From Ministeria vibrans ATCC 50519 (Eukaryota > Protista > Filasterea): a DNA stretch of 60,824 nucleotides. Under the pieces are notes generated by a model. The model was not told the DNA's origin. It ran no database searches and saw only the letters and a program-made list of their open reading frames with translations. The position numbers and the translations under genes are program-made. This document shows positions 2,953 through 44,362 of this stretch, piece by piece; the stretch's first letter is position 1; each line of letters starts with the position of its first letter. Where the stretch lies: positions 1 through 60,824 of the forward strand of contig CALSCP010002192.1 in the NCBI GenBank assembly GCA_943704425.1, written 5' to 3'.

Positions 2953-3756
2953 ATTTGCAGTACCTGCGGGGGAGTGGTCCACTTCTCGGTGAGTTTGTTG
3001 TTGACAGAGTACTCAAGCTCGTCGACACTAGACAACAGCCCAGCACCGTACGCCTTCACCGATCCCTACAAACACAGTGCGTCCATTCACATGCCATCTC
3101 TTGCTCTTTCCCTCTTCTCAAACACTTCGTTGTCCCTCCTGTCTCACTCACTCTCTCATGTCTTACGTTCTCACGTGTGACACCAAACTCAATGGTAAAC
3201 CAATAGACAGTTGCCTGTACAGAAAAATGAAACAACAACGAGTGCAAGTGAGTCGTTCAAACATCGCTCTGTCCCTGTTCGTACAATGCGGACAATGTCT
3301 TCGTCAGACACACCCAGTGACGCAAGACCTATCTCCTGCGAGAACGCTGCAAAGTCAGGATCGGCAAACAGCGGAACCTATTCAACAAAAGAAGTGTCAG
3401 ACGTCTCTGTCTCTGTCTCTCCTTTCTCCGTACGTGACCGAGCAATTCGTGGCACACATCGGGCTCAGGTGTGTAGAAGGGCTCTGAGTGGTGGCGCAGG
3501 TACTGCGTTGAGTGAAACACTCGAAATGCAAGCCCTACATATATACGTCGAAGTGTAAGACACTCAAGGGACACGGGGGCTTCTCGAATACCGTTGAGGA
3601 AATCGCGGGAGGAGAGAAGACCGGCGACGGGACGCAGACGGAAGCCTGTACAGTCGTGCAGGAAGTTGCTGACATCCTCAATTTGCGGCACATTGTCCGC
3701 GCTGTAACCGCAGTTGTCCTCGAGCAGAGGAAATACGCGCTGTTATAATTCAAAGA

Positions 3757-3801
<45 letters not shown>

Positions 3802-4726
3802 GACAAAGCGTTAAGGACGCTGGTTAAAATGCATTTGCTGTTCACTTACGAGATGTTCACGACACGCAAACTTCTCGTAAAGGCCACGCAGATGAGTGTA
3901 CACTGTTTTCCAAGTCTCCTTCTCGGCTGCGCCAGAACCACGAGTGTGAGTTGAGGAATAGTGCACTTTGCAGCTTACTGTCGGTGTACTCAACGCGAGG
4001 CAGCGGGTCGCCATAGCGGTAGTTCTTCGCAAGCTGGGCGATGATTTGGCGGCGCTCAATGTACACCTTGTCTGTGAAGCCGGGATGGTCTGCTTTGAGC
4101 TCGTGACCCATCGCGAGAATCTTGTTGGCATAGGTGTCGAGGTCGGCGATTTTGCGGGGGAACCATGGAACGGACGACGACCCGTCGCTGTCGTCCATCA
4201 CAATCACGTGGCTGGCCACACCGCTGAGTGCCGACACCAGCTCGGAGACTTCGCCCTTGCTGCGATCTACGAAAACAATTGTGCGAAAAATGCAAAAATC
4301 AATGGATGAAACACACAGTAAACGTGAGAGAGATATGACTCGCTGACACTTTCATACCGAGAGTAACGAAGAAGTCGTAAGAGTTGAACGATTCTTTACT
4401 GGGACGGCTCTCGATGTGAGAGAGCGAGACGCCGTGTTCCTGTGCGACAAAGAGCACAGAGTGCGATATGTTTGAGAGAGCGTTTTTTTTTTTTTTTTTC
4501 TCTGTCATCCCAATGGTTTGGCAGCAGCATGTGCAGAGACGCAACGAGGCACAGCGAAAGGGGATGCAGGGGCGGGCACAGCAGGACGCACCTTGAAGAA
4601 CTGCAGGACGTCGGCGAGCGCACCGGCCGTGGACGTAATGGAGAAGCGGATGCTCACGTTGCGCACGGACGGCGCGCTGTCGATGCTCGAGTTGAGCGCG
4701 TGCGGGGCGTCGCTGGCGATGTCCAT
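2263..4726 (-). CDS. PAH: Phenylalanine 4-hydroxylase with N-terminal ACT domain, multi-exon
   Basis: ACT motif LSHIESRPS; [33 protein letters not shown]; iron ligands in [14 protein letters not shown] and YWFTIEFG; [10 protein letters not shown]; [11 protein letters not shown]. Confidence 0.92.
2680..2950. repeat. CTCTATCACTTTGTTTCT minisatellite plus (CT)n in a PAH intron
   Basis: About 7 visible copies of TATCACTTTGTTTCT followed by (CT)n. Confidence 0.9.
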
Positions 4727-5732
4727 GCTGCGTCACACACAGGTCTTACAACTAAAAAATTTATTCATGAACAACTTTTGCAATGACAAGGGATTATCAA
4801 CAAAACAAAAGGTGATCGCAATGGTACGCCATACCCCAGTAAAGGCTTCGGCCTATGTCACCAATCAGTGAGTGATCAGTCAATCACCATCAACCACGAG
4901 TGAGGGAGTGAGACCGCGCTGAGCCGCTGACCGTCTTGTAAAATAAATTAANNNNNNNNNNNATAATAATAATTATTATGATTTAATCACTAATTTTTCT
5001 CCTCTACAACCGCAAGAGGACAACTGACTACGAAGTACTGAGTAAGCCATCTTTCTCACCTGCGTGTCCAGTCACTCCAGTATATGAGAGAATTGTGTTA
5101 CAGCTTGAAAGAAGTGGCAGCGCCGATGTGAATTGAATGTGAATGGGAAGTGTATGTCACCCAATAGTGGAGCACCTAAGTAGCCACAAGTTTGAAACCC
5201 AAATCGCCACCATCTTCGTGGCGTCTCCTGCCAATACGTTTATTCCTTTGTTAATATTGAGAGCTTGCCTATGAGATTGTGGTGTATTATCCCCCTTGTG
5301 CTTAGTTCGTGTTTAGAGAAAGTGATTTTTGATATTAATTCTTCTTTATATCCTCTGTACTATTTCGAGTCGACTCGTCTCAGAGGGTTAGAATTTAGTG
5401 GTGTTGCTTGGTGGTGGGAGTGTCAAGAATTCGGGTTTCTCTGAGCTGCAACGTGAATTGTAACCCCCCCTGTGGCGAAAATTGAAAAAAAAAAAACTTC
5501 ATTCTTCCTTCATTCCTCCTGTCTCCCCTTCCTTTCAGGACCTCCTCGATTGCTCCTCAATTCCCTTTGGGGGAGGGGGGGGGGAGGGGTGGTCTCTGGC
5601 TGGGAGGAAACTGTTGCCAATTGGTTCTCTTCTTTCTTTGAGTTTTGACTTCGTTTTGACATTCTCCCAAACTCCTCCCTTCCTCCCTAATCTTTTGCTT
5701 GGGGGTTCTCTCTTCTTGGGTTTATAGGAAGA

Positions 5733-6304
5733 ATGCGTTTTTGTCACTTTCTCATCGCTTGTGTGGCGACGATAGCAACGGTGGCGCTCGCTGCAGATGG
5801 TGAGACTGGCCAAACCCGTGCTCGTGCCGAGATATATTGCACTGGAGGAGCTATTGCTTGGGACGACTTTACTGATGGTGCAGTTCCCATTGCCGCCGCC
5901 AATCGCTACATTCGCACATCTTGTGAAGTGCTCAGTACTGGTACGGCCCGCGTATTTAATTGTACTCCCGGATTGTATAAATCCACACTGTTATTTCCTA
6001 TTATCTTCATTTTCCTTACAATGTACAATACAACTTCATTTTAGGTAACACCTTTTGCACGGTGGACGCTATGTCTATGCATGGCGGCGGCACTTGCGAT
6101 GTGTTTGTGTTTATGTTGCCACACCATTTTACGGCATACTGTACGCCACATGCGAGCCCATTGTGTAATATCGGTGACGCTGTCACCGAAACCCCACAGC
6201 CGGCGGGATATACTACCACGAACAATGGAGTCACATGCACGCTGCTATCAATTAAAACGCACGTGATTGGCACGCACACACCGGGCCCCAGCTGTCTTCA
6301 GTAA
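5733..6304 (+). CDS. Small secreted cysteine-rich protein (~155 aa), join(5733..5940,6045..6304)
   Basis: Signal peptide MRFCHFLIACVATIATVALA. A phase-1 GTACGG..TTAG intron (5941-6044) joins two ORFs in frame. The mature part has 8 Cys. Confidence 0.65.
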
Positions 6305-7005
6305 GCGTGCCCTCGCTATTACATTGAAGAATGAAGTTTCAAAGTTTGAAAAGGACTAATTCCGGACTAATTAAACATACAACGTTAACGCTAGTGAGAC
6401 GTCGATTGTGCCATTCACGAGCAACATGACTAGACTATAGCTAACACTCTTTAATTTCCATCAAAGCTCTAGATTTGAAGAATGATCAGGGAATATTACG
6501 GGTGTCCATACATGAACTACTAATTGTAATTGATACTACTATAATAATAATAATTATTATTATTATTATTGTTAATTAATAATAAGAAAAAGAAGAAGAA
6601 GAAGAAGAAGAATACAACCCATTATAATAATATAGTTAATTATTTTATTAATGATACATGTACAGTCACCACGCGAAGACAGCCCCTTAAGCTTGCAAAT
6701 TAAACTCACGAGAGGTAACGGGAGAACATGTACAGTGTCAGGTCAGAGTGCTGTGCCGTCGCTATCCCAGTGAGGCAATCGCAATGGTACGCCATACCCC
6801 CAGTGGGGACTTAGGGCTCTGACACCATGAAGGTGTCTGTCGACAAGGGGTGTAAAGTCGAAGTCGTGGTTGAAGCAATCGGATCGGTGGTCGGCGGCGG
6901 CAAGACCAGGTGGCTGCGGGGCGCTCCCGTGGTACACAGGTGGCGCGAGTCGGCTGCAGGAGCTAACTATAGGGTGGCTGGCGTGCATGTTGTTGTGACT
7001 GTCTG

Positions 7006-7567
7006 TTAGATTATGGGAATAAAGATATGGATGGGTAGGGGGATAAAAAAAACGGGGGGTTCGGGTGAATCACTGGGTGGCGTTGACGGCGACGATGAAA
7101 CATTGTTACATCTCCCCCAGGGGATGAAGTGCTTCATAGTGCGTGTCGTTGGTCGCGCGCAATGCCTCGGCAAGGGTCTTTCCGACCAATGAGTCGTGTC
7201 GGTGTCGGTACACCGCAGGGTGAGCACAGTGGAGCAGAAAGTGTTCTGGGCTCTCCGTGGCCAGCGGTGGCTGTAGTGATTGTTGCTGTTGTTGTTGTTG
7301 TTGTGGTTGTCGGGTGGCTGGGCACATGCAACAGCGGAATGTGTCGACTGTCGCGTTCACAGGAATATCGAAGCGCGCGAAGGCTGAGCCTGTCATACCG
7401 GCGGATGCAGGTGGAGCCCGTGATGAATGCGTTGTAGTGCAGCAGCAGCCGCACTTACCCGGAACTTTTCGGCGTCTTGCTCAGTCAGGTACTTCTTATA
7501 AGTGCTCAGCCGGTCGAACATTATGTCCTTGATCATGAGCGGCGACGGGCTTGTGGGTTCCGAGAGA
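7006..7567 (-). mobile_element. Decayed 3' fragment of a non-LTR retrotransposon ORF2 (CCHC zinc knuckle)
   Basis: CCMC...ESPEHFLLHC matches the C-x2-C..E-x2-H-x4-C knuckle found after RT in LINEs. The reading frame is broken by frameshifts and contains a poly-Q microsatellite. Confidence 0.6.
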
Positions 7568-7568
7568 C

Positions 7569-7569
<1 letters not shown>

Positions 7570-7667
<98 letters not shown>

Positions 7668-7678
7668 TTATNNNNNNN

Positions 7679-7715
<37 letters not shown>
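7570..7715. repeat. (TAT)n, N gap (7672-7678) and (GA)n junction
   Basis: Directly visible. Confidence 0.95.
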
Positions 7716-7718
<3 letters not shown>

Positions 7719-7778
7719 AAGTAATAGACGCACGCACGCACGCACAAAAAAAAGAAAAAAAAAAGAAAAAAAAAATAC

Positions 7779-10700
7779 CTTGCGTCATAGGTGCTCTTGC
7801 GACCGCGGAAGGTCTCGCTGGCAAAGAGTTTCTCGCGCAAAACCCTCTTGCGGCTCGCCGATAGAGAGAGACGGTATTTACGACAGCGCCAGCGATGGTG
7901 CATCTTCTCAAGCTCCTCGGAGACCTTGCGAAGGTTCTTGCGGGGCGTCATCCAGGTACCCTTCGCCGTGGGTGAGTCGCGCGGAAGGGAGCGCGACAAA
8001 CGCGTGAGCCAGAGAAACTTTTGCAGGTTGATCATGAAACGTTTGATGATGGGTGCGGCCCAAGCGCGCGGACGAGCGTAGTTTCGGCAGCGCCATTGGT
8101 GGTGGAGGGAGCGCAAGATGGACGACGTGCGCATCAAGTTGCTTGGGGGCTTCATCCACCGCTTGTCGATGGGCGAGTCGGACGGGAGTGAGCGAGAGAG
8201 TCGCATGAGATACTGATGCTTCTGGAGACCTTGCATGAAGCGTATGATTATGGGGGCGGCATGGGCACGGGGACGCGCGTAGTTACGGCAGCGCCACTGG
8301 TGGTGGATCTTCTGGATGAGATTGCTCAGCTTGCGCAAATTAGACGGGGGCTTCATCCAGCGCTTGTCAATAGGCGAGTTGGAAGGCAGGTTCTTTGCAA
8401 GACGCATGAGGAAGCGGTAGCGCTGCAGGGCCTTCATGAAGCGAATGATGACGGGCGCGGCGGCGGCACGGGGCCGGGCGTAGTTGCGGCAGCGCCACAG
8501 GTGATGCATCGAGCGCAGGAGGTTGTTGGTTTGGCGACAGTTGACGGGCGGCTTCATCCAACGCTTGTCAATGGGCGAGTCAGTGGGCAACGCCACTGAC
8601 AGACGCATGAGGTACTGGTGCTTTTGAAAGGCCTGCATAAAGCGTGTGAGGATGGGCGCGGCCCAGGCACGCGGACGCGCATAGTTGCGACAGCGCCACT
8701 GATGGTGCATGTAGTGCAGCAGGTCGTCAGTCTCGCGCAGGTTGGAGGGAGCTCTCGGCCAGAAGAGATCGGCAGGCGACTCGGAGGGCAACTCGCGCTC
8801 GAGACGTTGCAGATAGAGGCGTTTTTGCAGGGCAAACATGAAGCGAATAAGAATCGGTGCGGCCCAGGCGCGTGGGCGAGCGTACTCTCGACAGCGCCAC
8901 TGGTGATGGATGTATTGCAAGAGGTTCGACGCGGGCATCAGACTGTTGGGGGCGTCGGGCCAGGCATTGTCAATGGGCGAGTCGGAGGGAAGTTCGAGGT
9001 AGAGGCGCTTGAGCCAGCGGTGACGTAACACCTGGCGCAGGAAGCGCTGGATGATGGGCACGGCCCAGACGCGCGGACGGCAGTACTCGCGACAACGCTG
9101 CACATGATGGAGTCGCTGGATGATGCTAGCTGTCGTGGCGAGGCTTCTGGGTGCCGGTGGCCACGAGCAGTCAGTGGGCGACTCGGTAGGCACTTCTTGA
9201 GAGGCGCGCGTGAACCAGCGAACTCGGAGAAGCGCCTTCATGAAGCGTTGCAGGACGGGTGCGGCCTTGGCACGGGGACGCGCGTATTCACGACAACGCC
9301 ACTGATGGTGCATGTACTGGAGAACGTCGCTGCCCATCTTGAGATTGCGGGGCGGCGTAGGCCAGCTGCGGTCAATAGGCGAGCGCGTTGGCAGTTCGCG
9401 AAGGAGCTTTTGGAGGAAGCGAACGCGTTGAAGGGCGGCCATAAAGCGAATGAGAATGGGTGCGGCCTTGGCACGGGGGCGCGCATACTCACGACAGCGG
9501 TAGAGATGAAACATGTCGACGAGAGCCTGGTGACCCGCACTGAGGTTCTTGGGGGCGGTCGGGAAGGCTCGGTCGATGGGTGAGAGGGACGGCCAGGCCT
9601 TGGCGCACCGCTTGAAGTAGAGGTGAAGTTGGAGGCGACGGAAGAAGCGCTGGAGAATGGGCGTGGCCCAGGCGCGGGGACGCGCGTAGCGACGACATCG
9701 CTCCTGGTGGTAGATGTACTCGAGTTCGCTTGAGACATGAGCAAGGTTGCGGGGCGCGATGGGCCACTTCTTGTCGATGGGTGACATGGTTGGCAGGCCC
9801 TCAGACACGCGAGTGAGCCAACGGTAGCGCTGCAGACCCGCCATGAATCGTTGAAGAATGGGCGTAGCCCAAGCACGCGGGCGAGCATAAGCACGACACT
9901 GTAGAGAAATAAGAGGAACGAGAGTGAGACAAGTGAGTCAGAGAAAGAATATTGAACGAAAATTATAACAATAAAACAATAATAATTATATCAATTCTCT
10001 TACGCGCATTTGGTGGTAAATATATTCGATGATATCGGAGGTGCGCTGAAGAGAAGCGGGTGCGTCCATCCAGTGCTTGTCGATGGGAGAGAGAGAGGGA
10101 AGTTGGGTGGAGAGACGCGTGAGGTAGCGGTAGCGCAGGAAGCGACGCATGAAGCGAGTGAGAATGGGAGCCGCCCAAATGCGCGGGCGCATAAAGTTGC
10201 GACAGCGCCACACGTGGTGGAGGTCTTCAAGGAGCAAAGCAGTCTTTTCGAGGGCGGGCGCCGCGGGTGGGTAGGAGTCGTCGAGGGGCGAGTCGCTGGG
10301 CAAGAGACGGGCATACTTTAGAAGGAAGTTGACCTTTTGCCACTGAAGCATGAAGCGCGAAACGATGGGACCAGCCCACTTTTTGAAGCGACGAATGTAG
10401 CGACGCCACGTGAAGTAGCCTCGCACAGCGGCCTGAATCTTGATTGCGGAGCGCTTCATAAGCTTGTAGCGCTGGCGCTGGCGGTAGCCACGCCACTGTG
10501 CCGAAATGAGGATCTGGGCGGCACGCATGTGCTGGTAGTGGCGCCACTGGTACCAGCCACGGTAGACGGCCTGAATAAGCGTCGCAAGACGATGCAGGCC
10601 TTGGCGACGACTATCTTCGAGGTGAAACACCGTGCGCGGCTTGCGCACAAAGACCTTGGTGCGACCAAAGGCAAAGCCCTCGGCGGTGATGCCAAGCTCG

Positions 10701-12208
10701 GCCAAAATGTAGTTGGTGGCCTCACGCGACGGTACACGCTCCCAGTAAGGCCACACGTCGGGAGTGAGCATGCGGTAGCGCTCGACGAAGCGCTCGTAGG
10801 TCTGACGGAATGCAAACCCCGCACGACGCACGCGAACATTCTCGAGAAGACCCAAGTAGCGACACTGGTGACGCACAAGGTCCTCCTCAAACTTGTGGGC
10901 CTTCTTTTCATCGTTGGGTTTGATGCAACGCACGTAGTGGGGCGTCTTACTGAGGAGGTTTTCCATGAGCGACTGCATGCTCACCTTGAACTGAGCGCCG
11001 GCGGTGGGCGGGCGCTTCTTGCTGCCGCCCGAACGATGGAAACCCTTGTCGGAGCGACCGTCTGCGGAGTTCGACGAAGACTCGCCGTCGGGGAAACACG
11101 CCTTGAGGAGCGCATGGTCCGAGTTGAAGCAAGCATTCTTGAGGTCCTTGAAGAGCAAGTCACGGTTCTTCTCGAGAAACCCCTCTGTGTTGTAGTCGAC
11201 GTCGCCAGCGTAGTGCTTGAGTCGGAAGCACGTGTAGGCAATTTGGCGGTTGCGCGACGAACCGTAGCTATCGTAATGGGGGTGCGAGGCGTAGCGTTCG
11301 TCGAGGTCGGCAAGAAAAGCCTCGTCGCTGGCATTGCCGGGTCGCAGGCACATGTCGTCGAGGAGCGCGAGAATGCCCACGGTGGGCTTTTCGATGAGGT
11401 CGCAAATGATGCGGTTGTTGAAGTAGGCGACGGGAGTCCATTCGATGCCCTCGGCTGCGTACTCATCCTGCTCCGACTTGAGCGTGAGCTCGATAAAGAT
11501 TTGTTGGAGCTTCTCGTTGCAGTGGTTGATGACGAACTGCTCAAAGGTGTTCGAGGTAAAAATCTCAAAGCCGTAAATGTCAAGGACGCCAATGCAGCGT
11601 GTCTTCTTGCTCTGCTTGCCAAAGACCGCCTCGCGCGACTTGCGCAGTTTGGAGTTGATACGTTGAATGACCCACGAGAACATACGGTCGTAAATGGCCT
11701 TGGCAAGAGCATCGCGCGCAAACAGCGCCATGGAGTGGTTGAGTGGCGACTTGACCGACTCGCGCACCGTCTCGACCGTGCGGTTTGTCAGTGCTTCCAG
11801 CAGCATGTCAGTTGGGAGTTTGACAAGCGACGCGGCCAGTTCGAGAGCTATGCAGTGACGCATATTTTAATGAGCAGCATGCCGAAGGAAGTAGGGTATA
11901 AATGCACAACTTACATTTGCGGTCGACTGGAACCGCCTGTTCCTCTCCAGTGAAATCAATGTTTCCTATGTGAAGGATGGCGGCAAGAAGCGAAAAGAGT
12001 AGGCTCACTTCGGTCTGATCAAAGCCAATCAGATCGAGTCCGTTCTAAACAAAGCAGGCAATCAGGTTTTGCGCACTGCTCCGTGTTTTCTTCTTTTTAT
12101 ATATCGTTGTACCTTTGTCTCTTTGTAGGCGAGCGTATCGTCAATGGTGGCAACACGCACACAGCCACTGTCACTGAGATAGCGATATTGCATTGGGTCT
12201 CGCTCGAG
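7779..12208 (-). CDS. Class I myosin (Myo1a/b/c-like), partial: motor C-terminal two-thirds, 3 IQ motifs, 12 tandem post-IQ repeats, start of TH1
   Basis: ARDALAKAIY, GVLDIYGFE, CNEKLQQIF, CLRPG, HYAGDVDY, KRPPTAG, HYVRCIKPND, ENVRVRRAGF and FGRTKVF. IQ motifs IQAVYRGW, ISAQWRGY and IQAAVRGY. EKLFASETFRGRKSTY marks the TH1 start. The P-loop exons and most of TH1 are absent from the window. Confidence 0.92.
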
Positions 12209-12249
12209 CTTACAGAAACCTATAAATTATATTATTAGGAAAAATATGA

Positions 12250-12318
12250 AAATAATTATTATAATTATTTTTATTATAATTATTTTTATTATTATTATTA
12301 TTATTATTATAATAATTA

Positions 12319-12417
<99 letters not shown>

Positions 12418-12440
12418 TTATTATTATTACTATTATTCTT

Positions 12441-12501
<61 letters not shown>

Positions 12502-12559
12502 ATAGTATTCTTATTATTATTATTACTATTCTTAGTATTCTTATTATTATTATTATGAG

Positions 12560-12625
<66 letters not shown>

Positions 12626-12635
12626 CTATTATTAT
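12250..12635. repeat. Degenerate (TAT)n array
   Basis: Directly visible; lies where the myosin's upstream intron should continue. Confidence 0.95.
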
Positions 12636-12664
12636 TCAAATTTTCACTCTAAACTTTTATCCGT

Positions 12665-14771
12665 TCATTTTCTTGGTCGAATGGTATAGGAGATGCTGGG
12701 GGAGGAAGTGAGAATAGGGGCGATGGGACAGGCGACGGACTGAAGCAGGCCGTTTCGCGAGACGACAGGTTCGCCATCGAGAGCACATAGAACATGGTGG
12801 CCCGGCGAGATGTCGTCCACCTGGAAGGTCTGTGTGCCCCACTGTGGGTTTCCGGGCAGCGACACTTGCGCGGTAGTGTTGGTCAGCAACACGCTAGTGT
12901 AGCTGTGGCCGTCGAAGAGGAAGGCGGGAAAACGCACACCAAATGCGGTGATGTGGTCGCCCGACAGTGACGCGCGCACTTGTACACCCGTTGACGGACT
13001 GAGTGTGTACTCTTCGGTGACACGCACCCTGTCGAGCTGGTAGTGAACGGTAAAGGCAACGCTGTCGGGCTGCGGCGTACCGTTGGGCGCAAAGTCAATG
13101 TTCTTAATGTCTTTATAGCTGGAGTTGGCGAGCGACGAGAGGGTGCCGTCCGCGGTGGTCCAGAAAGCGCCAATGGCCAGACCGCCGTGTTGCTGTTCAG
13201 TGCCCGCCGAGGGCCCCAACAACGACTGAAGCGGACCTTGGTGCACGCGCTGCAGTCCCGATGAGTCGTAGTGGGGGTCGGCGGCCGTCTCAAGCTCGAC
13301 ATACAGACCGGCGGCATTGGCAAAGATCTTGTTGAGCTTGGGAATGCGGAAAGCAAACCCTCCAACCTCGGCGGGCGCCGCACACTCAGCAATAGTATCG
13401 TCCATGTAGAGCAGCGCCGTCGCCAGCATCGACGCCGGCAGCAGGTTGTACTGCGCCTGGTACGAGTAGCTCTCGTAGCCCCAACGCAGCGACGGATCAA
13501 AATGATTCTTGATGATCTGCAGTTCGCCCGTCGGCTCGTTCTGCCAGCGACGCACCGACTGCAGCGACAATCTCGACGCCCGTTTATACTGGCAGTGGCT
13601 GTCGGCACTTTGGTCCGTGTCCGTCGCTCCCAATTCGTACAACACCGTCATGACCGCCTCGTTCCACTGGTGCTGACTGCTCCGCCCACCCGTCTACATT
13701 TACAACAACAACAACAACATCATCACCATCAACGGTTTCAATCAAAAGACAACACGCCACAAGAACAAGTACGGGTATTTCGCCACGAGGGCTCTGCATG
13801 ATGAGAGAGACAAGCTTGCCGCGTCGCATGAGCTCGGTGAGATCAGCTGCGTGGGCGCCTGCATAACCCTCGCGCAGCATCACCGCAATGTACTTGCGCG
13901 GAAAGGCATCGTATGGCATAGGATTAAGGCCGTCCATGCCACTGTGATCCTCGTAGTTGCCGTTGTCCGTCAGCGCCTGCGACTCCCATTGCTTCTCGAG
14001 CTCCTTCTTGTACCAATCCGGCTCCGTATTAAGTCCCGCCTTGTCGCGCAAATATTCACCCGCAACCGCCACTAAACCCCAATTATTGCCTAAGTTAATG
14101 TATGCCTTGTCGGGATTGATGGCACGCAGCATGGTCTCCCATTGTGCCTTTTGCGACACGGAGACGTACTGACTGAGAATGCGATATGCAAACTACAGAA
14201 GAAAGGTCTGGTTGGTCAAACGCGATCAGGCACAAAGGACCGCAAAGGAAAGGTACCATAAGTGGCATGATATAAAAGTTGCAGTGGCCCTGTGCGCACG
14301 TGACGTCGACGAGGGCCGTCAGAGAGAAGTTGAAGGCACGAATGGCCGACTCGAGCAACACTGCACGCTGTTGCGTGTGGTTTCGCTCGACGAGCGTTGC
14401 CGCCGCAAACGAGTAGCAGGGTGTCGAGTATTGGATCTCTTCTTTGGCATACTTGTCGATAATGGCGCCCTCTGCGTTCTGCTGTGCCTGAAAATGCACC
14501 ACAATCCCTAAAAACAAACAAACCGAAATCAACACTCACTCACGCACACACACACACACGCTCTCTCTCTCTATCTTGCTCTCTTCTCTATACCTGAGAT
14601 GGTATCCAGGTAGTCGGAGGCAGAGAGGCCGGTCGGCGCGACGGGAGCCGCCTGCGAAGCGAAGTGGACTGCCTGCGAGGTGACTTGGGCGAGGGGAAAG
14701 GCGCCAATGGAATAGGCGCGGGCAGAGCCGCCAGTCAGTCCAATCAGAGTCAACGCGATGACCACAAGCAT
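12665..14771 (-). CDS. Secreted ~625-aa protein resembling uncharacterised bacterial putative glycan-acting proteins; exons 14771-14594, 14507-14257, 14192-13773, 13693-12665
   Basis: Signal peptide MLVVIALTLIGLTGGSARA. Three GT-AG introns splice in frame (1878 nt). Conserved-looking blocks YDAFPR, MQSPRGEIPTGGRSSQHQWNE and KNHF..RWGYESYS..QYNLL. Helical N-half, beta-rich C-half. Function is inferred. Confidence 0.7.
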
Positions 14772-21913: not shown

Positions 21914-25484
<3,571 letters not shown>

Positions 25485-38346: not shown

Positions 38347-41300
38347 TCAGTAAAACATGGAGTTGGCTGGCTCGAAGTCACCGGCGATCCAAGCGTCGTG
38401 CGAGGGTGCCTCGTCTAGCCGGTAGGAGGAGCGACGACGCACCGCCTGAGCGGCCGCATGGTCGTCGTCGGCCACAATGGGCGGTAGTGAGCCCTGTTCG
38501 CTTCGCATGCGCAGGTCAAGCTCTACCTCGAGCTCATGCAGTCCCGCGTACTCCACCGCGCCCTCTTCCACCACATTCTCCATGGGATAGGCAATGTCGA
38601 ACGGAATCGACGAGTTGAGCAGGTTCATTTCGGAGCCGCTTGTCGACAGGTTTAGCTCGCTTAATGACGCACCCGACACATGCGAGTGGAGTGGCTCGAG
38701 TGCGAGTCCACTCTCGCTGGCACGTCGCGTCTTGGGCTTGCGGTACATGTTGGAGCCGGCGACGGTGCGCTGCGTGCTCAACGAACGCGACAAGGTTGAA
38801 TCAATGGATGAGCGTGAGGAGCCCTGCAGGATGCGTGTGCGCATGTCGCGCACCTTGTCTTGCACACGTCGCAACAGTTCTTCACGCGTGCGACCCGACA
38901 GCACAAAGAAGACACACAGGAAGACGCCCTGCGTCGTGTTGAACAGCACAAAGAGATACCAGAAGACGACACCGCCGCCGACCATGGCCAGGTAGGCAAA
39001 TACCCAGGCGAGACCCAGACACGCGACAATGCCGCCAAAGAGCACCACCTGTTGCGTCGCACGACGCTTCTGCTTGGTCGCCGCACTCTTGGACATTTTG
39101 CCAAAGGTCACGTCGGTCAGCTTGACGGTGACAAAGACAAAAATGGTAATGTTCACCATGAGGAGGATGCCCACGGGAATGAGAAATGCCCCATAGAGAC
39201 CCCAGGTGGTGGAGATCCAACAACGGTTGGCGTCACCAAAGCCAATGGGGCTGTTCAGCGCCGAGTCAATGCCCACAAGAATGCCTGTGATGACCAAGGG
39301 CAAGCCCCAGCCCAGAAGCACGTAAATCTTGGTGCGAGTCGCATTACCAATGAGCGTGATGAACATGAAGCGCAGATTGTCGGCAATGATGGTCATCCAT
39401 GCAAAGGCGGCCAGCAGGAAGAAGTAGAGGAGCGCCGCGATAACACGGCACCCCAGCGCATTCGACGTGCGATCAATGCCCACCAAGAAGATAAGGTTGA
39501 CACAAAACAGCGCGACACCCAGGTTGAGCACGAGGCGAATGGGTCGTGAGCGGAAGGTGGGTACAATGGCGTAGGCGAGGAACATGAGAGCGATGCATAC
39601 CATCGAGGCAATGCAACCCACATAGGTGAGAACCTCGAGGACCTTGGCGTCCTTTTGCGACAACGTCGATGAGCCCGAGGGGGTTGCCAGCACCGCAAAG
39701 CTGGTCAAATGAGTGCAGCGACACACCGTGTGCGTGGCATTGTCGCTCTGAACCGAGCAGCCCGTCGTGCTATATGTCTTCTCCGTCGCGTCCCAGTAGT
39801 AGCAGCCGCGCGTGCCGGTCGTTGCGCCGTCGTGCGAAAGTGCCATCACCACCGCATTGGCATCGCTCAGACCCCACACGGTCGTGGCGGACACGGAAAA
39901 GGTGAACACGTCGGAGACCACAGAGCGAGCCGTGGTGGTCGCGTCGCGACGCCGACGGCTCGTCATGGTCGTCTCCTTCGTGTCGAGGTAGGGCGACTCG
40001 TCGTAGCGAATCACCTGAAGACCATAGCACGCTTCGGTGGGCAGCGTGGAGACAAAGCCCTGCGAGAGACTCACCAAATTTCGTCCGTTGCGACTCGCAT
40101 AGTCACCCATCACCTCGGCAGTGGTAGAGCGTGTGATCACCGACATTTCGACCGCGCCACCCTGGTAGACGGTCTCCGAGTCGCAGGGACTCGCCGTGGT
40201 CACCGCATCAGCAAGACGGTTCACCACTCCGGCAATTTTATTTGCTTGTGACGCCGTATTCAGGCGATCAATCGACGATGTCGTGAGCATGTCGCCGAGC
40301 GTCGTGAGTGTCGACGAAGCAATCGAATTCAAATCCGCGTCGATGGGCGAACCGGGAGCGCCAATGGTGGCGCTGGAGGCAGACGTCTCGGCAAACGTCA
40401 CAACACTCGACAGTACGTCCATCACATCGGAAGAGGTTGTCTCGGCATCGGAGAGCTCGAGCCAGCTGTTGGACTGGGCGACATTGCGCAGCAGCGACAC
40501 GCGCGTGGTGGCAGCCGACAGGCTGGACACCTGAACGCCAACCGTGCCCTTGAGCGACTGCATGTTGCACGCGACGGATGACGCAAGCGTCGAGGTGCCT
40601 GTTGTCGACAGCGAGCCTCCCACCACAACACCAATGTTGTCCCACAGCGTGAAACAAAAATCCGTAAGGCTTTGCAGTAGCACATTGCCGTTCACCTGCA
40701 GCGCACTTGTGAGCGCGGAGACGCTTGCCAGACGTACATTACTTGACAAGTTCAGGTTGCCCGTAATCAACGTCAGCAGGCTAGGTGTGCTCAAAGAACG
40801 AAGATGGGGTAGTTGCGTGAGCGTGAGCGAACCCGTCAGCACCGTCAGGCGGGACAGGCCCACGTTTGCAAGGAGGGCGTTGTTGCGAATCACAATGTCG
40901 CCCGTGTGCGCACCCGTGAGTGCTGTGTCGGCCAGGCCGGAGCCTGCAAGTGTTAGCAGCTTGTTGTTGCCCTCAATGAACACATCACCCTGACTGAGCG
41001 ACGTGAAGCCGGAGAGGGACACGAGTGCGGGGTTGGCACTCACAGTGATGCGCGACACTTGGACGATGCTACTAAAAGCGCATGTGATGCTGGTGAGCGC
41101 CGCATTGTTCGAGATGAGAATCTCGGCGTCCACTGCAAACAATGGTGAACCGCTGGCACACGGGAACGAGGCAAGCAGTCCGTTGTCCGACACAACCAAC
41201 TTGTTGAGGGGGCCGGCGAGTCCTTCGAGCCCCGTCAGCGAGACGAGTCCCGCATTGTTGTGAAGCACCACCGACGTGATGCCCGAGCTCACGGTGCCCT

Positions 41301-44300
41301 CACCGAGCCACGAGGTTGTCGTGGTACCGCAGTTGGTGATGTTGATCACGCCCCTCTTGAGGATGGTGGTGAGCGAACCCAAGTTTACGAGCTGAGGCAA
41401 CGCGTACAAATTGAGGCTGTTGAGTGACGCGAGGGAGGTAGGAAGGTCAAACTGAAAGAGCAATGGCGAAGCCCGGACGTTGAATGTACCACCCACCGAA
41501 GCGAGTTTGTGCATAGAGCGTATGCGCTGCAACGCCGGGTTGGATACAATGGAAAAGTCGCCACCCACAGTCTCCAAGCTGGGAAACTCGAGGATGATGA
41601 GCAGTGCATTGTTCTCGATGGTGAGATTGCCGCCTACGGATGTGAGTGCCGCCAAGTGAGTCAGCTGGGACAGTCGTGGCATGTTCTTCAAGGTGAGCGA
41701 ACCCGTCACGGCCGTCACCGACGCGAGGTCAGCAAGGCTCGAGGCTGCGTCAATGACTAGGTCTCCGCCAATAGTGCTACACGTCGCCAAGGTTGCCATC
41801 GATGCATCCGAAGAGCGCACCGAGCCGCGACAGTCCACGCCACATGTAAGACCCGAAGTGTAAGGAAGGCAATCGCACGACTTCCTGCCACCTTGTTCGA
41901 GAAGGGGCACACAGGTGCCGCCGTGCAAGCAAATGTTCAAGTCGCAAACGGTCATGTCCGTCTCGCAGACGTCTCCGGTGAATCCTTCGGCGCACGTACA
42001 CAAAAACGAGTCGGTCACCTCGATGCACACACCCTGGTTTTGGCATGGAGCCGAGACACAAAATGAGGGCAGCTCGCACGTGAGTCCACGAAAGTTGCCG
42101 GGACATTGACATGTGAAGCCGTTGACGGCATCGACACACGTCGCCCTGCTGGTGCAGGGCGACGAGTTACACTCATCAATGTTCACGGTACATGTGCCCC
42201 CGGTGTAGCCGGCGGCACAGTCGCAGCGGAAAGAGTCGACAAGGTCGGTGCAGGAGCCGCCATTGACGCAAGGGTTGTTGACACAGTCGTCTGTGTCTGT
42301 CTCGCACCGGGCTCCCTCGTAGCCGGGAGGACAGGTGCACTGGAAGGCATTTACCTTGTCGGCACAGGTTGCACGGTTCTCACACGGCGACGAAGCACAC
42401 TCATCAATGTTGATAGAACAGTCGAGGCCTTCAAAGCCTGCGGCACACACGCAGGTGTACAAGACGATGCCGTCGAGGCAGCTTCCGCCGTTCTGGCAGG
42501 GTGCCGAGGCGCAGTCGTTGATGTTCACCTCGCAAGAGTCGCCTTGGAAGCCATCTTGGCATTCGCAGATGTACTTGAGGACGCCATCAATGCAAACTCC
42601 CTCGTTTTGGCAGGGCGACGAATTGCACTCGGGCAAATTTGTTTCGCACACGACGCCGGTGTAGCCACCCGCACACAAGCATTGGAAGCCGTTGACAGCG
42701 TCGACGCAGGTGCCACCGTTGGTACAAGGCGTGCTGGCACACTCTTGCACGTTGGTCTGGCAGGTGACTCCGACAAACCCGGGGGCACAGCTGCAGATGA
42801 AGACATTGATACTTTGCGTGCAAGTGGCACCGTTGGAGCAGGGAGACGAGGCGCACTCGTCAATGTCGCTCTCGCACAGCGTGCCGGTGTAGCCAGCGAC
42901 ACACGTGCACGTGTACGAAAGCAACCCATCCAGGCAGACTGCGCCGTTCTGACAAGGCGCCGAGGCGCACTCGTTGATGTTGGTCTGGCACCGGTTGCCA
43001 GTGTAGCCGGCAACGCACAGACACGAGGAGCTGCCTGATTGCTGAGCGCACAAGCCTCCATTGAAACACGTTGCCGTCTCGCACTCGCTGGTGAGTGCTT
43101 GAGTGTACACGCGCACATCGCTCAGGTCAGCGGCCATGTAGTCGTCGGACGAGCTCGACGAGCGACCAATGTAGTTGACGGAGCGCTCGACAGTTGCCAG
43201 AGGCAGCGCCTCTGTAAAACTTTCGGTTGTGATAAGCACGCCATTCTGGAAGTAGCGCACAGTTTTTCCGTCGGCCGTCATGTCGACAGCAACGTGTGTC
43301 CACTCGTTGAGGATGAAAGTGTTGCTCAAAAGAGCAAATCGCTCGACGCCACCGTTGCGCCAGGTGAGTGCAAGACGACCGATGCCAGCGCGAAACGAAA
43401 AGAAGATGTTATCGGTGCCTGCAACGGTACCCAGCTCAATGATGCGACCCCAGTTGGAGTAGCTTCGCGCGCGCATCCAGGCGGTGAACGCGAGGGTTTG
43501 CTCACCAATAGTGGTCGGTGGCACCGTCACGTGGTCGCTGACACCATCGAGGGCCAGGAAACCATTAGGTGGGGTCATGGCCAGTGCCGATGTGGGATAC
43601 CAACTGTTCTGGGGATTGCTTGGGCCGACGAGAACGCCGTTGGCGCTGGAGCACGCCGAATCGGCAACGTTGGCACCGTTGTTCTGTCCCGCGCCGTCCA
43701 TGTTGTAGTCAAAGAGCAAGCCTGAGGAGCAGGAGCACGCATAAGCATTGACACGGTCGGCGCACGTGAGCGGCGACGTGCAGGGTGACGAGGCACACTC
43801 ATCGTCGTTGGTTGAGCAACGAGTGTCGGAGTAGCCTTGGGGGCACGTGCACTCAAAGGTTGCCTTGCCCGACATGACAATGTTGTCGATAGCCCAGAAC
43901 CAGGCGGGCGTGCTGCTGCGCATAATGAAGGAGATCACGGCCGACGTGGCACCCGCCGGGTTGTTGAGGTTGAGCACCAACGACTCAGAGAGCGCGGTCA
44001 TCTTGTACGCGTCCGAAGTTGAGTCGGCGCTGTAGGTCAAGGGAGTTTCGGTGCTGAGCACTTGGCCGGCGGCGTTTGAAAACTCAACGGTGACCGTGGC
44101 CTCCTGCGACACGCCCGCCGTGATTTTCCACGCCGACGAAAAGGCAACTTGCAACTCGTTGATACTCAACAAGGAGACGTCGACGCTCACTGAGAGTTTC
44201 GCTGCGAACACACCACTCATGGTGGTGGCGCTGCTGTACGCATCCAGATCGGCAACAGCAATAGTGTTGAGACCGGCCGAGAAGGAGGAACGATCTTCGT

Positions 44301-44362
44301 TGCCTTCGCTGCTGATCCACCACACATTGTTCACAAACGTCCAGCCCTCGTACTACACAGTA

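What the first reader, a model, noticed from the sequence alone, without database searches (positions are those of the whole stretch)
7875..10378. Myosin-I with its post-IQ neck module amplified into 12 tandem ~67-aa units
Seen: after three canonical IQ motifs come 12 units of ~67 aa (201 nt), with consensus about WAAPIL.RFM..LQ+..YL.RL...LP.DSPID+.W..PP.NL.....LL...HHQWRCR.YARPRA. The 12th unit runs into the TH1 start (EKLFASETFRGRKSTY). All units are in frame, and a single intron (~9900-10003) interrupts unit 2. Established: Myo1a/b/c have one such segment (Myo1b-type LSPIDKNWP...FHLWRCKKY), and in Myo1c it helps bind calmodulin and makes the neck rigid and Ca2+-sensitive. Myosin levers normally lengthen by adding IQ motifs. 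Inference: ~800 extra residues form a new repeat-built lever or spacer, possibly with many calmodulin sites, letting a membrane-actin motor span a much larger gap (filopodia or microvilli) or act as a Ca2+-collapsible tether.
Basis: partly seen in the sequence, partly recalled or inferred. Interest (0 to 1): 0.9.

Follow-up and report, generated by a model that had tools for sequence, protein, structure and literature searches.

The report
Myosin-I with twelve tandem post-IQ modules
A class-I myosin gene of an unidentified single-celled eukaryote carries twelve in-frame copies of the short "post-IQ" neck module that all other found myosin-I proteins have once, which probably gives this membrane-actin motor an exceptionally long neck.

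Summary
On the minus strand, three IQ motifs are followed by 12 units of exactly 201 nt (67 aa), from 10378 to 7862. All are in frame. One 105-nt GT-AG intron (10003-9899) lies in unit 2, and unit 12 runs into the TH1 start. A profile of the unit matches the post-IQ of mouse Myo1c (PDB 4R8G). A model of unit 1 superposes on that segment.

The units are old. Nucleotide identity is 47-70% and synonymous sites are near saturation, yet 12 residues are invariant. In 1.84 billion representative proteins, every relative listed has one unit. A paralog in the same genome has three.

RNA-type runs hold 0.92 of the sampled words, as expected for a fully spliced mRNA with all units (0.923). This is indirect.

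The gene is split by assembly breaks at microsatellite introns. The motor start lies on contig C192 and the TH1 body on C2195.

The array is very basic (about +9 per unit) and is predicted as 51-residue helices joined by 16-residue proline-rich connectors. The most likely function is a greatly extended neck, probably loaded with calmodulin-like light chains. That function is inferred, not shown.

Verdict: real, a new variant of a known kind.

The parts
12113..12219 (-). Motor-domain exon ('..R FCKLERDPMQYRYLSDSGCVRVATIDDTLAYKETK'). Its acceptor AG is at 12221-12220, directly after the (AAT)127 microsatellite.
   Evidence: The phase fits the donor on contig C192.
11915..12044 (-). Motor-domain exon ('NGLDLIGFDQTEVSLLFSLLAAILHIGNIDFTGEEQAVPVDRK').
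10004..11847 (-). Exon A: C-terminal half of the motor, three IQ motifs, unit 1 and the first 58 residues of unit 2.
   Evidence: Myosin_head E 3e-130; IQ; closest solved chain is Myo1b, E 1.7e-101.
10379..10597 (-). Three canonical IQ motifs.
   Evidence: Pfam IQ, 3 stretches.
10178..10378 (-). Post-IQ unit 1, the most divergent unit, which follows IQ3.
   Evidence: AF2 model residues 35-101 have pLDDT >90 for most. Superposes on 4r8g_E residues 746-828.
10004..10177 (-). Unit 2, N-terminal 58 codons.
9899..10003 (-). Intron of 105 nt, GT..AG, phase 0, after 'HQMR'. This is the ancestral intron position of the module.
   Evidence: The same position is seen in all 3 units of the paralog and as read-through in animal fragments.
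9872..9898 (-). Unit 2, last 9 codons ('CRAYARPRA').
8063..9871 (-). Units 3-11, nine units of 201 nt each (starts 9871, 9670, 9469, 9268, 9067, 8866, 8665, 8464, 8263).
   Evidence: AF2 model of units 8-10.
7862..8062 (-). Unit 12, the terminal unit. It has one extra residue in the connector, and its end leads into TH1 instead of the 'YARPRA' junction.
7779..7861 (-). Linker and first 20 residues of TH1 ('LREKLFASETFRGRKSTYDA'). The exon ends in phase 2 before the donor GT at 7778-7777.
7672..7778 (-). Start of the next intron: T-rich, (GTGC)n, (CT)17, then a 7-N scaffold gap (7672-7678). The TH1 body continues on contig C2195, which begins with (CT)43.

Best explanation
This is a real, transcribed, selectively maintained short-tailed class-I myosin gene. 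Its motor is closest to Myo1b among solved structures. The post-IQ module is the helix-connector-helix segment that in Myo1c sits between IQ3 and TH1 and helps hold the third calmodulin. Here it has been multiplied to 12 tandem copies.

The module is bounded by an ancestral phase-0 intron. The array therefore most likely grew by tandem duplication of a symmetric 201-nt exon, with later loss of all but one of those introns.

The product is an ~800-residue, strongly basic segment of about +9 net charge per unit. In the models, helix 2 of each unit runs straight into helix 1 of the next, giving 51-residue helices joined by conserved 16-residue Pro-rich connectors. In this layout each helix 2 takes the place that IQ3 has relative to the single post-IQ of Myo1c.

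I infer that the array is a modular extension of the neck between motor and membrane-binding TH1. It is probably neutralised and stiffened by one calmodulin-like light chain per unit, bound in the Myo1c IQ3/post-IQ manner. That would give a lever or tether of tens of nanometres whose stiffness could respond to Ca2+.

Shown here: the anatomy, the homology, the antiquity and constraint of the units, and their rarity. Inferred: light-chain binding, rod shape, length and cellular role.
For: - Anatomy and register.
- Homology to the Myo1c post-IQ: the unit profile hits 4r8g_E at E 9.2e-5. The model of IQ3 plus unit 1 gives 4r8g_E as top hit, Z 7.7, rmsd 4.3 A, 68 residues, 28% identity. The model of units 8-10 also gives 4r8g_E as top hit, Z 8.1.
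- Class-I identity.
- Constraint: units share 47-70% nt identity, with mean pS 0.64 against pN 0.39 and median dN/dS 0.41. Twelve columns are invariant.
- Transcription: five runs guessed to be RNA hold 0.92 of the sampled 31-mers. The expected value for a spliced mRNA with all units is 0.923, and each skipped unit would cost 0.083.
- Independent DNA: a 2022 run from another sample holds 1.00 of the words.
- Helix-connector-helix prediction with helices continuous across unit borders.
- Basic composition.
- Role of the post-IQ in Myo1c (N-lobe of the third calmodulin binds it; Ca2+ changes tail flexibility): PMC4914028 and PMC7948490.
- Exon-duplication origin: the intron position is shared with the 3-unit paralog and with animal genes.
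Against: - Pfam IQ finds nothing inside the units. Only 4 of 12 units keep an IQ-like '[IL]Q...HH/HQ...R' remnant.
- No calmodulin complex could be tested.
- pTM of the 3-unit model is 0.37, so the mutual arrangement of units is not predicted with confidence. The array could be extended or folded back.
- Two conserved prolines lie in each unit junction (RPRAWAAP), where AF2 draws a continuous helix with lower pLDDT. The junction may be a kink or hinge.
- The RNA evidence is a k-mer share in runs only guessed to be RNA.
- The TH1 body and motor N-terminus are assigned from other contigs by inference.
Confidence: 0.55

Rival explanations
1. The array is a light-chain-free polybasic rod or platform. 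Its ~+110 net charge binds acidic partners directly, such as acidic phospholipids, F-actin or nucleic acid. It would then act as a second membrane- or actin-binding region or a passive spacer, not as a calmodulin-decorated lever.
For: The composition is extremely basic: R 14.9%, K 4.6%, D+E 5.5%. No Pfam IQ motif lies inside the units. Basic neck and tail regions of Myo1c have been discussed as electrostatic binders (PMC5797967).
Against: The unit is homologous to a segment that in the only solved structure contacts calmodulin. The most conserved residues are aromatic, hydrophobic and Arg on the junction helix, not just bulk charge.
Confidence: 0.2
2. The units fold back on each other into a compact helical solenoid. 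This would be a protein-interaction or regulatory domain that adds little length between motor and tail.
For: pTM is only 0.37 for three units, so an extended arrangement is not established. Helix-loop-helix repeats often form solenoids.
Against: The connector is 16 residues long, conserved and Pro-rich. That fits a connector running back along a parallel helix pair, as in HAMP (3lnr_A, Z 5.8-6.0, rmsd 3.9-4.0 A over 67-69 residues), better than a tight hairpin. In Myo1c the module is part of a rigid extended neck (PMC7948490).
Confidence: 0.12
3. The array is a dimerisation rod. HAMP-like helix pairs from two heavy chains would form a four-helix bundle and make a two-headed myosin-I.
For: Only the weak structural resemblance of single units to poly-HAMP, an obligate dimer.
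Against: Nothing supports it. The Z values are below the level the tool advises trusting for helical proteins. Like-charged +9 units would repel each other without an acidic partner.
Confidence: 0.05
4. The array is not functional. It would be an assembly artefact, a decaying pseudogene or an untranslated region.
For: The window's scaffold is demonstrably broken on both sides of this gene piece, at microsatellites. No reads were laid.
Against: The units differ by 30-53% at the nucleotide level, so they cannot be assembly duplicates. The frame stays open over 706 codons, and dN/dS is well below 1 with saturated synonymous sites. All unit-specific words recur in independent runs, including RNA-type runs at the share expected for spliced mRNA. 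The array is physically continuous with the motor and IQ exon.
Confidence: 0.04

Closest known systems
Post-IQ domain of vertebrate myosin-1c (PDB 4R8G; Lu et al. 2015, as summarised in PMC4914028 and PMC7948490)
   Same: The same module by sequence profile (E 9e-5) and by model superposition (Z 7.7, rmsd 4.3 A, 68 residues). It has the same position after IQ3 and before TH1, and the same 'LP..SP.D..WP..P' connector and 'H.WRC+.Y' helix.
   Different: Myo1c and every relative found have one copy, while this gene has twelve in tandem. The internal units end in a new junction (YARPRA-WAAP) that fuses helix 2 to the next helix 1 instead of leading into TH1. Myo1c has about 15 extra residues in helix 1.
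Lever-arm lengthening by extra IQ motifs (e.g. Myo1b/myr1 splice forms, myosin V with six IQs)
   Same: The neck is lengthened by repeating a short basic helical module between motor and tail. Light-chain loading is probable.
   Different: The repeated module is 67 aa (helix-connector-helix), not a 23-25-aa IQ. Pfam IQ does not match it. The repeats are fixed in the gene, not produced by alternative splicing.
Single alpha-helix (SAH) lever extensions of myosins VI, VIIa and X
   Same: A way other than IQ motifs to extend the neck.
   Different: SAH domains are E/K/R-rich and roughly neutral, and form one uninterrupted helix. This array has 5.5% D+E, 9% Pro and regular 16-residue connectors.
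Poly-HAMP arrays of bacterial receptors (Aer2, PDB 3LNR)
   Same: Only an architectural analogy. Both are concatenated helix-connector-helix units in which the second helix of one unit continues as the first helix of the next.
   Different: There is no sequence relationship. HAMP is an obligate dimeric four-helix bundle, and dimerisation is not supported here. The Z values of 5.8-6.0 are not decisive for helical proteins.
Three-unit paralog in the same genome (contig C1670)
   Same: The same unit, in a myosin-I with IQ motifs and TH1. Its units 1-2 group with array units 2-12.
   Different: It has three units, each still carrying the ancestral intron after 'HHxWR'. The 12-unit gene keeps that intron only in unit 2.

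Membership tests
Class I myosin, short-tailed (Myo1a/b/c/d/g/h/k type) | Myosin motor domain of class-I type | tested here: met
   Pfam Myosin_head E 3.1e-130 on exon A. The best solved relatives are Myo1b (E 1.7e-101), Myo1c and Dictyostelium MyoE, far ahead of other classes. The N-terminal third, including the P-loop, lies on contig C192.
Class I myosin, short-tailed | IQ motifs after the converter | tested here: met
   Pfam IQ, three stretches, at 10597-10379.
Class I myosin, short-tailed | C-terminal TH1 domain | tested here: inconclusive
   The first 20 TH1 residues are in the window. No TH1 body lies in 3000-7780 on either strand. The body is on C2195, which starts with the same (CT)n tract. 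It has an acceptor in the fitting phase and continues the TH1 profile from position 21. The physical linkage is inferred, not shown.
Myo1 post-IQ module | Sequence and fold match to the Myo1c post-IQ (4R8G) | tested here: met
   Profile hit E 9.2e-5 to chain residues 79-133. By VIA-align, Z 7.7, rmsd 4.3 A, 68 residues, Myo1c 746-828.
Myo1 post-IQ module | Binds the N-lobe of the calmodulin held by the preceding IQ | not testable with these tools
   No canonical calmodulin sequence could be obtained by reference.
IQ-motif repeat lever | Units match the IQ motif (PF00612) | tested here: not met
   No IQ hit in exon B or in units 8-10, even at E 10. An IQ-like remnant is seen in 4 of 12 units. 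ESM Atlas look-alikes are IQ proteins, but only at 0.80, below the trusted range.
SAH (single alpha-helix) lever extension | E/K/R-rich uninterrupted helix | tested here: not met
   D+E 5.5%, P 9.1%. The helices are interrupted every 67 residues by a 16-residue connector.
HAMP / poly-HAMP | Dimeric four-helix parallel bundle with the HAMP sequence signature | tested here: inconclusive
   Only a structural resemblance of one unit: Z 5.8-6.0. There is no Pfam HAMP hit. The homodimer prediction gave no verdict. The array is not filed as a member.

The most novel reading that the evidence does not exclude
Each of the 12 units, together with the IQ3-like helix 2 of the unit before it, binds one calmodulin-type light chain in the unusual Myo1c IQ3/post-IQ mode. 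The single-headed motor would then carry about 15 light chains on a rod of roughly 45-100 nm. That would be the longest lever or tether of any known myosin, and the first built from a non-IQ, non-SAH repeat, with stiffness that Ca2+ can switch along its whole length.
Probability: 0.3. Interest if true: 0.8.

Novelty: new variant of a known kind. Interest (0 to 1): 0.62.

Why it matters
Myosin necks set step size, reach and force sensitivity. Two known ways to lengthen them are extra IQ motifs and SAH helices. A natural myosin-I whose neck is lengthened about twelve-fold by repeating the post-IQ module would be a third route.

It would also be a ready-made series for testing how neck length and calmodulin/Ca2+ control the tension sensing of a membrane-bound motor. 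The same genome offers a 3-unit gene to set beside the 12-unit one, and relatives elsewhere have one unit.

Domain-based myosin surveys cannot see this array, because no Pfam model covers the post-IQ. The 2014 pan-eukaryotic myosin classification has no occurrence of 'neck' and describes class-I tails only as IQ plus TH1 (PMC3942036).

Tried and rejected
No reads were laid.
- Putative exon 7567-7459 downstream of the N gap: first considered, then dropped. It has no TH1 similarity, and C2195 supplies the TH1 body in the right phase.
- Relatives with several units: none were found. In the unit-profile search of 1.84 billion representatives, the best hit scored 76 bits. The rows with '2 stretches' that I read (8 of them) are each one unit, six of them visibly split by a read-through intron. 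The exon-B search gave six weak single-unit hits. The JGI metagenome scan with junction patterns gave nothing. These collections cover protists thinly and may hide this genome's own records.
- The look-up of encoding contigs on the 758-aa ORF: nothing on record.
- Calmodulin: the best EF-hand loci turned out to be centrin, calcineurin-B-like, fimbrin and others. No canonical calmodulin ORF was found, so no calmodulin complex was predicted.
- Complex prediction homodimer of units 8-10: no verdict (score 0.00). This is not evidence either way.
- Alga as source: rejected, because no LHC genes were found.
- Aphelid as source: considered because 'algae metagenome' runs hold the sequence. It is not supported. 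There is no sign of TAA/TAG reassignment in these ORFs, and aphelids are reported to lack myosin VI, whereas earlier unchecked notes list myosin-VI-like genes here.
- Recent homogenisation of the 3' units: not supported. pS between neighbours is 0.53-0.77.
Unit 2 was left out of profile A1. Its two pieces were compared codon by codon only inside a local script. Three short paralog peptides printed were re-used as text in the local tree script.
Full report
**Observation.** The feature lies on the minus strand. An open exon (11847-10004) encodes the C-terminal half of a myosin motor (Pfam Myosin_head, E 3.1e-130). It also encodes three IQ motifs (Pfam IQ, three stretches), the first repeat unit, and 58 residues of the second.

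A 105-nt intron with GT..AG ends and in-frame stops (10003-9899) follows. A second exon (9898-7779) then runs for 706 codons without a stop.

Units start at 10378, 10177, 9871, 9670, 9469, 9268, 9067, 8866, 8665, 8464, 8263 and 8062. Each is exactly 201 nt, or 67 aa. Eleven intact units align with a single one-residue gap, in unit 12. Twelve columns are invariant: A2, P4, R8, F9, P27, S30, P31, H55, R58, C59, R60 and R64.

In a six-frame scan of the organism's whole 29.7-Mb assembly, each unit matches the unit profile at E 3e-25 to 9e-36. After unit 12 comes 'LREKLFASETFRGRKSTYDA', which matches positions 1-20 of a TH1 profile built from relatives.

**What the unit is.** The unit profile finds one entry among all PDB sequences: the tail of mouse myosin-1c (4r8g_E, E 9.2e-5). 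The match covers the connector 'LPRNVLDTSWPTPPPAL' and its flanking helices, which is the post-IQ.

I made an AlphaFold2 model of IQ3 plus unit 1 plus part of unit 2, with 31 relatives as the alignment. It has pLDDT above 90 over most of unit 1. Its best match among 48,161 PDB representatives is again 4r8g_E: Z 7.7, rmsd 4.3 A, 68 residues, 28% identity, Myo1c residues 746-828.

According to the literature held here, the N-lobe of the third calmodulin of Myo1c binds this post-IQ while its C-lobe holds IQ3. The region forms part of a rigid neck, and Ca2+ changes its flexibility (PMC4914028; PMC7948490).

**The whole gene.** The window does not hold the whole gene.
- *Downstream.* Exon B ends in phase 2 at 7779. 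Its intron runs through a (CT)17 tract into a 7-N scaffold gap at 7672-7678. A local profile search finds no TH1 body anywhere in 3000-7780.
- *TH1 body.* Contig C2195 (5.5 kb) begins with (CT)43. It then has an acceptor AG followed by one base and an open frame, 'S-VPIMFRGDRFGLNDTSYVGMWNEV..'. That frame continues the TH1 profile from position 21 to 163 and ends in a stop.
- *Upstream.* Exon 12219-12113 follows an (AAT)127 microsatellite. Contig C192 (1.3 kb) ends in the same microsatellite. It encodes the P-loop part of a myosin-I motor, and its donor ('..GAV C|GTAAGT') has the phase that fits.

I conclude that the assembly broke at microsatellite-filled introns and that the gene is probably complete: motor, 3 IQ, 12 post-IQ units, TH1. 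The linkage is inferred.

**Real, old and constrained.** The units share only 47-70% nucleotide identity. Mean synonymous difference is 0.64, near saturation, against 0.39 at non-synonymous sites. Median dN/dS is 0.41. Such diverged copies cannot be an assembly duplication. The frame and the twelve invariant residues have survived long divergence. The most similar units are 9-11, but even there pS is 0.53-0.69, so I see no recent homogenisation.

Public runs support the sequence. A 2022 run from another sample holds 1.00 of the sampled 31-mers. Five runs that the tool guesses to be RNA, from two studies, hold 0.92. A fully spliced mRNA carrying every unit should hold 0.923, and each missing unit would cost 0.083. 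This is indirect evidence.

**Origin.** A second myosin-I gene, on contig C1670, has three units. Each is interrupted by a phase-0 intron directly after 'HHxWR'. That is the position of the single intron in unit 2 here. It is also the position read through in genomic fragments of other species' myosin-I genes ('..YHKWR|V..').

The ancestral module is thus bounded by a phase-0 intron, and in the array one repeat from that intron position to the next is exactly 201 nt. This allows in-frame tandem exon duplication. The 12-unit gene must then have lost 11 of these introns, or expanded after losing them.

In a tree of the single-exon core of the unit (44 columns, weakly resolved), units 2-12 and paralog units 1-2 form one group apart from 112 units of other organisms (support 94/91). 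Unit 1 and the paralog's last unit fall outside that group. This fits an expansion of internal units in this lineage, with the first and last units keeping their ancestral contacts to IQ3 and TH1.

**Rarity.**
- A profile search of 1.84 billion representative proteins gave 169 hits. The best scored 76 bits, the score of a single unit. No listed row has more than two matched stretches. The eight two-stretch rows I read each hold one unit, six of them visibly split by a read-through intron.
- A search with the whole repeat exon gave six weak single-unit myosin-I hits, from ticks and a bird.
- A scan of JGI metagenomes with the junction peptides found no relative.
- Pfam has no model for the module. 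Domain-based surveys such as PMC3942036 describe class-I tails only as IQ plus TH1.
- Two literature searches found no description of such an array.

These collections cover protists thinly and may hide this genome's own records. 'Absent elsewhere' therefore means 'not found'.

**Likely working.** AlphaFold2 on units 8-10, with other three-unit windows as the alignment, gives mean pLDDT 84. It predicts helices at 3-24, 41-91, 108-158 and 175-197. Helix 2 of each unit continues into helix 1 of the next, and 16-residue Pro-rich connectors ('LPSDSPIDKRWMKPPSNL') link the 51-residue helices. The same holds for IQ3 running into unit 1. Each helix 2 thus stands to the following unit as IQ3 stands to the post-IQ of Myo1c.

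After 4R8G, the next structural match of a single unit is a poly-HAMP array: 3lnr_A, Z 5.8-6.0, rmsd about 4 A over 67-69 residues. This suggests a parallel helix pair with the connector running back along it. Such a stagger would advance about 3.7 nm per unit, or about 45 nm for the array. These Z values are below what the tool advises trusting for helical proteins, and pTM is 0.37. The length could lie anywhere from a compact bundle to about 100 nm.

The array is very basic: R 14.9%, K 4.6%, D+E 5.5%, about +9.4 per unit. Like an IQ neck, it would need acidic partners.

My best reading (confidence 0.55) is a modular, light-chain-decorated extension of the neck that acts as a long lever or tether between actin and membrane. 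Calmodulin binding is not shown:
- Pfam IQ does not match the units.
- Only four units keep an IQ-like remnant.
- I could not obtain a calmodulin sequence to test.

Rivals are a light-chain-free polybasic lipid- or actin-binding rod, a compact solenoid, a dimerisation rod and a non-functional region. The homodimer prediction gave no verdict.

**Context.** The source organism is not identified. It lacks LHC genes and has more than 25 myosin loci and at least 8 TH1 loci. The window also encodes an adhesion-GPCR-like protein with EGF, LamG, GPS and 7tm_2 domains. The picture is of a heterotrophic protist with a rich actin-motor toolkit. A link to filopodia or microvilli is speculation.

**Method note.** All queries were single exons given by reference.

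**Verdict.** The function is plausible but untested. This is a new variant of a known kind, of real interest to myosin biology.

Noticed in passing
window 7672-7778 and 12255-12636; contigs C2195 (L012) and C192 (L015): The scaffold is broken or mis-joined at microsatellite-filled introns of the myosin gene. The TH1 body sits on a 5.5-kb contig that starts with (CT)43. The motor N-terminus sits on a 1.3-kb contig that ends in (AAT)n. In the window, the (ATT)127 tract abuts the 3' end of an unrelated ORF (12665-13651, minus strand).
   Followed up: partly
L011 (G000:C1670:12000-21999), minus strand, about 6830-8420: A paralogous myosin-I has three post-IQ units. Each is split by the ancestral phase-0 intron after 'HHxWR'. 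Units 1 and 2 also have an extra intron inside helix 1, and an N gap lies in one intron.
   Followed up: partly
window 38350-44334, minus strand: A single 1995-aa ORF with 8 EGF domains, Laminin_G_3, Recep_L, GPS and a 7tm_2 domain. It is an adhesion-GPCR-like receptor in a unicellular genome.
   Followed up: no
window 22375-25392 (+), 51778-54744 (-), 55699-59667 (+): 2-oxoglutarate dehydrogenase E1 split over two adjacent ORFs, a UBE2O-like giant E2 with tandem SH3-B domains, and a 1323-aa NACHT/AAA protein.
   Followed up: no
whole assembly G000: More than 25 myosin-head loci and at least 8 TH1 loci in 29.7 Mb, and no chlorophyll a/b-binding genes. The best EF-hand loci were centrin, calcineurin-B-like and fimbrin. 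A canonical calmodulin ORF was not found among the top hits.
   Followed up: partly
window 7700-10500 in public runs: Near-identical sequence is held by runs labelled with five different organism codes and by an 'algae metagenome'. A small share is held by a marine poly-A metatranscriptome. The organism may be a culture associate or contaminant, or may be filed under several names.
   Followed up: no
window 8216-9583 and 10337-11953, plus strand: Long antisense ORFs (up to 538 aa) overlap the myosin exons. They look like by-products of the GC-rich codon usage on the coding strand.
   Followed up: no
window 7862-10378, minus strand: Every unit keeps an invariant Ser-Pro in the connector ('SP[IL]D') and an invariant Cys in 'WRCR'. 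That gives twelve regularly spaced S-P sites and twelve cysteines whose roles (structural, phosphorylation or redox) are unknown.
   Followed up: no
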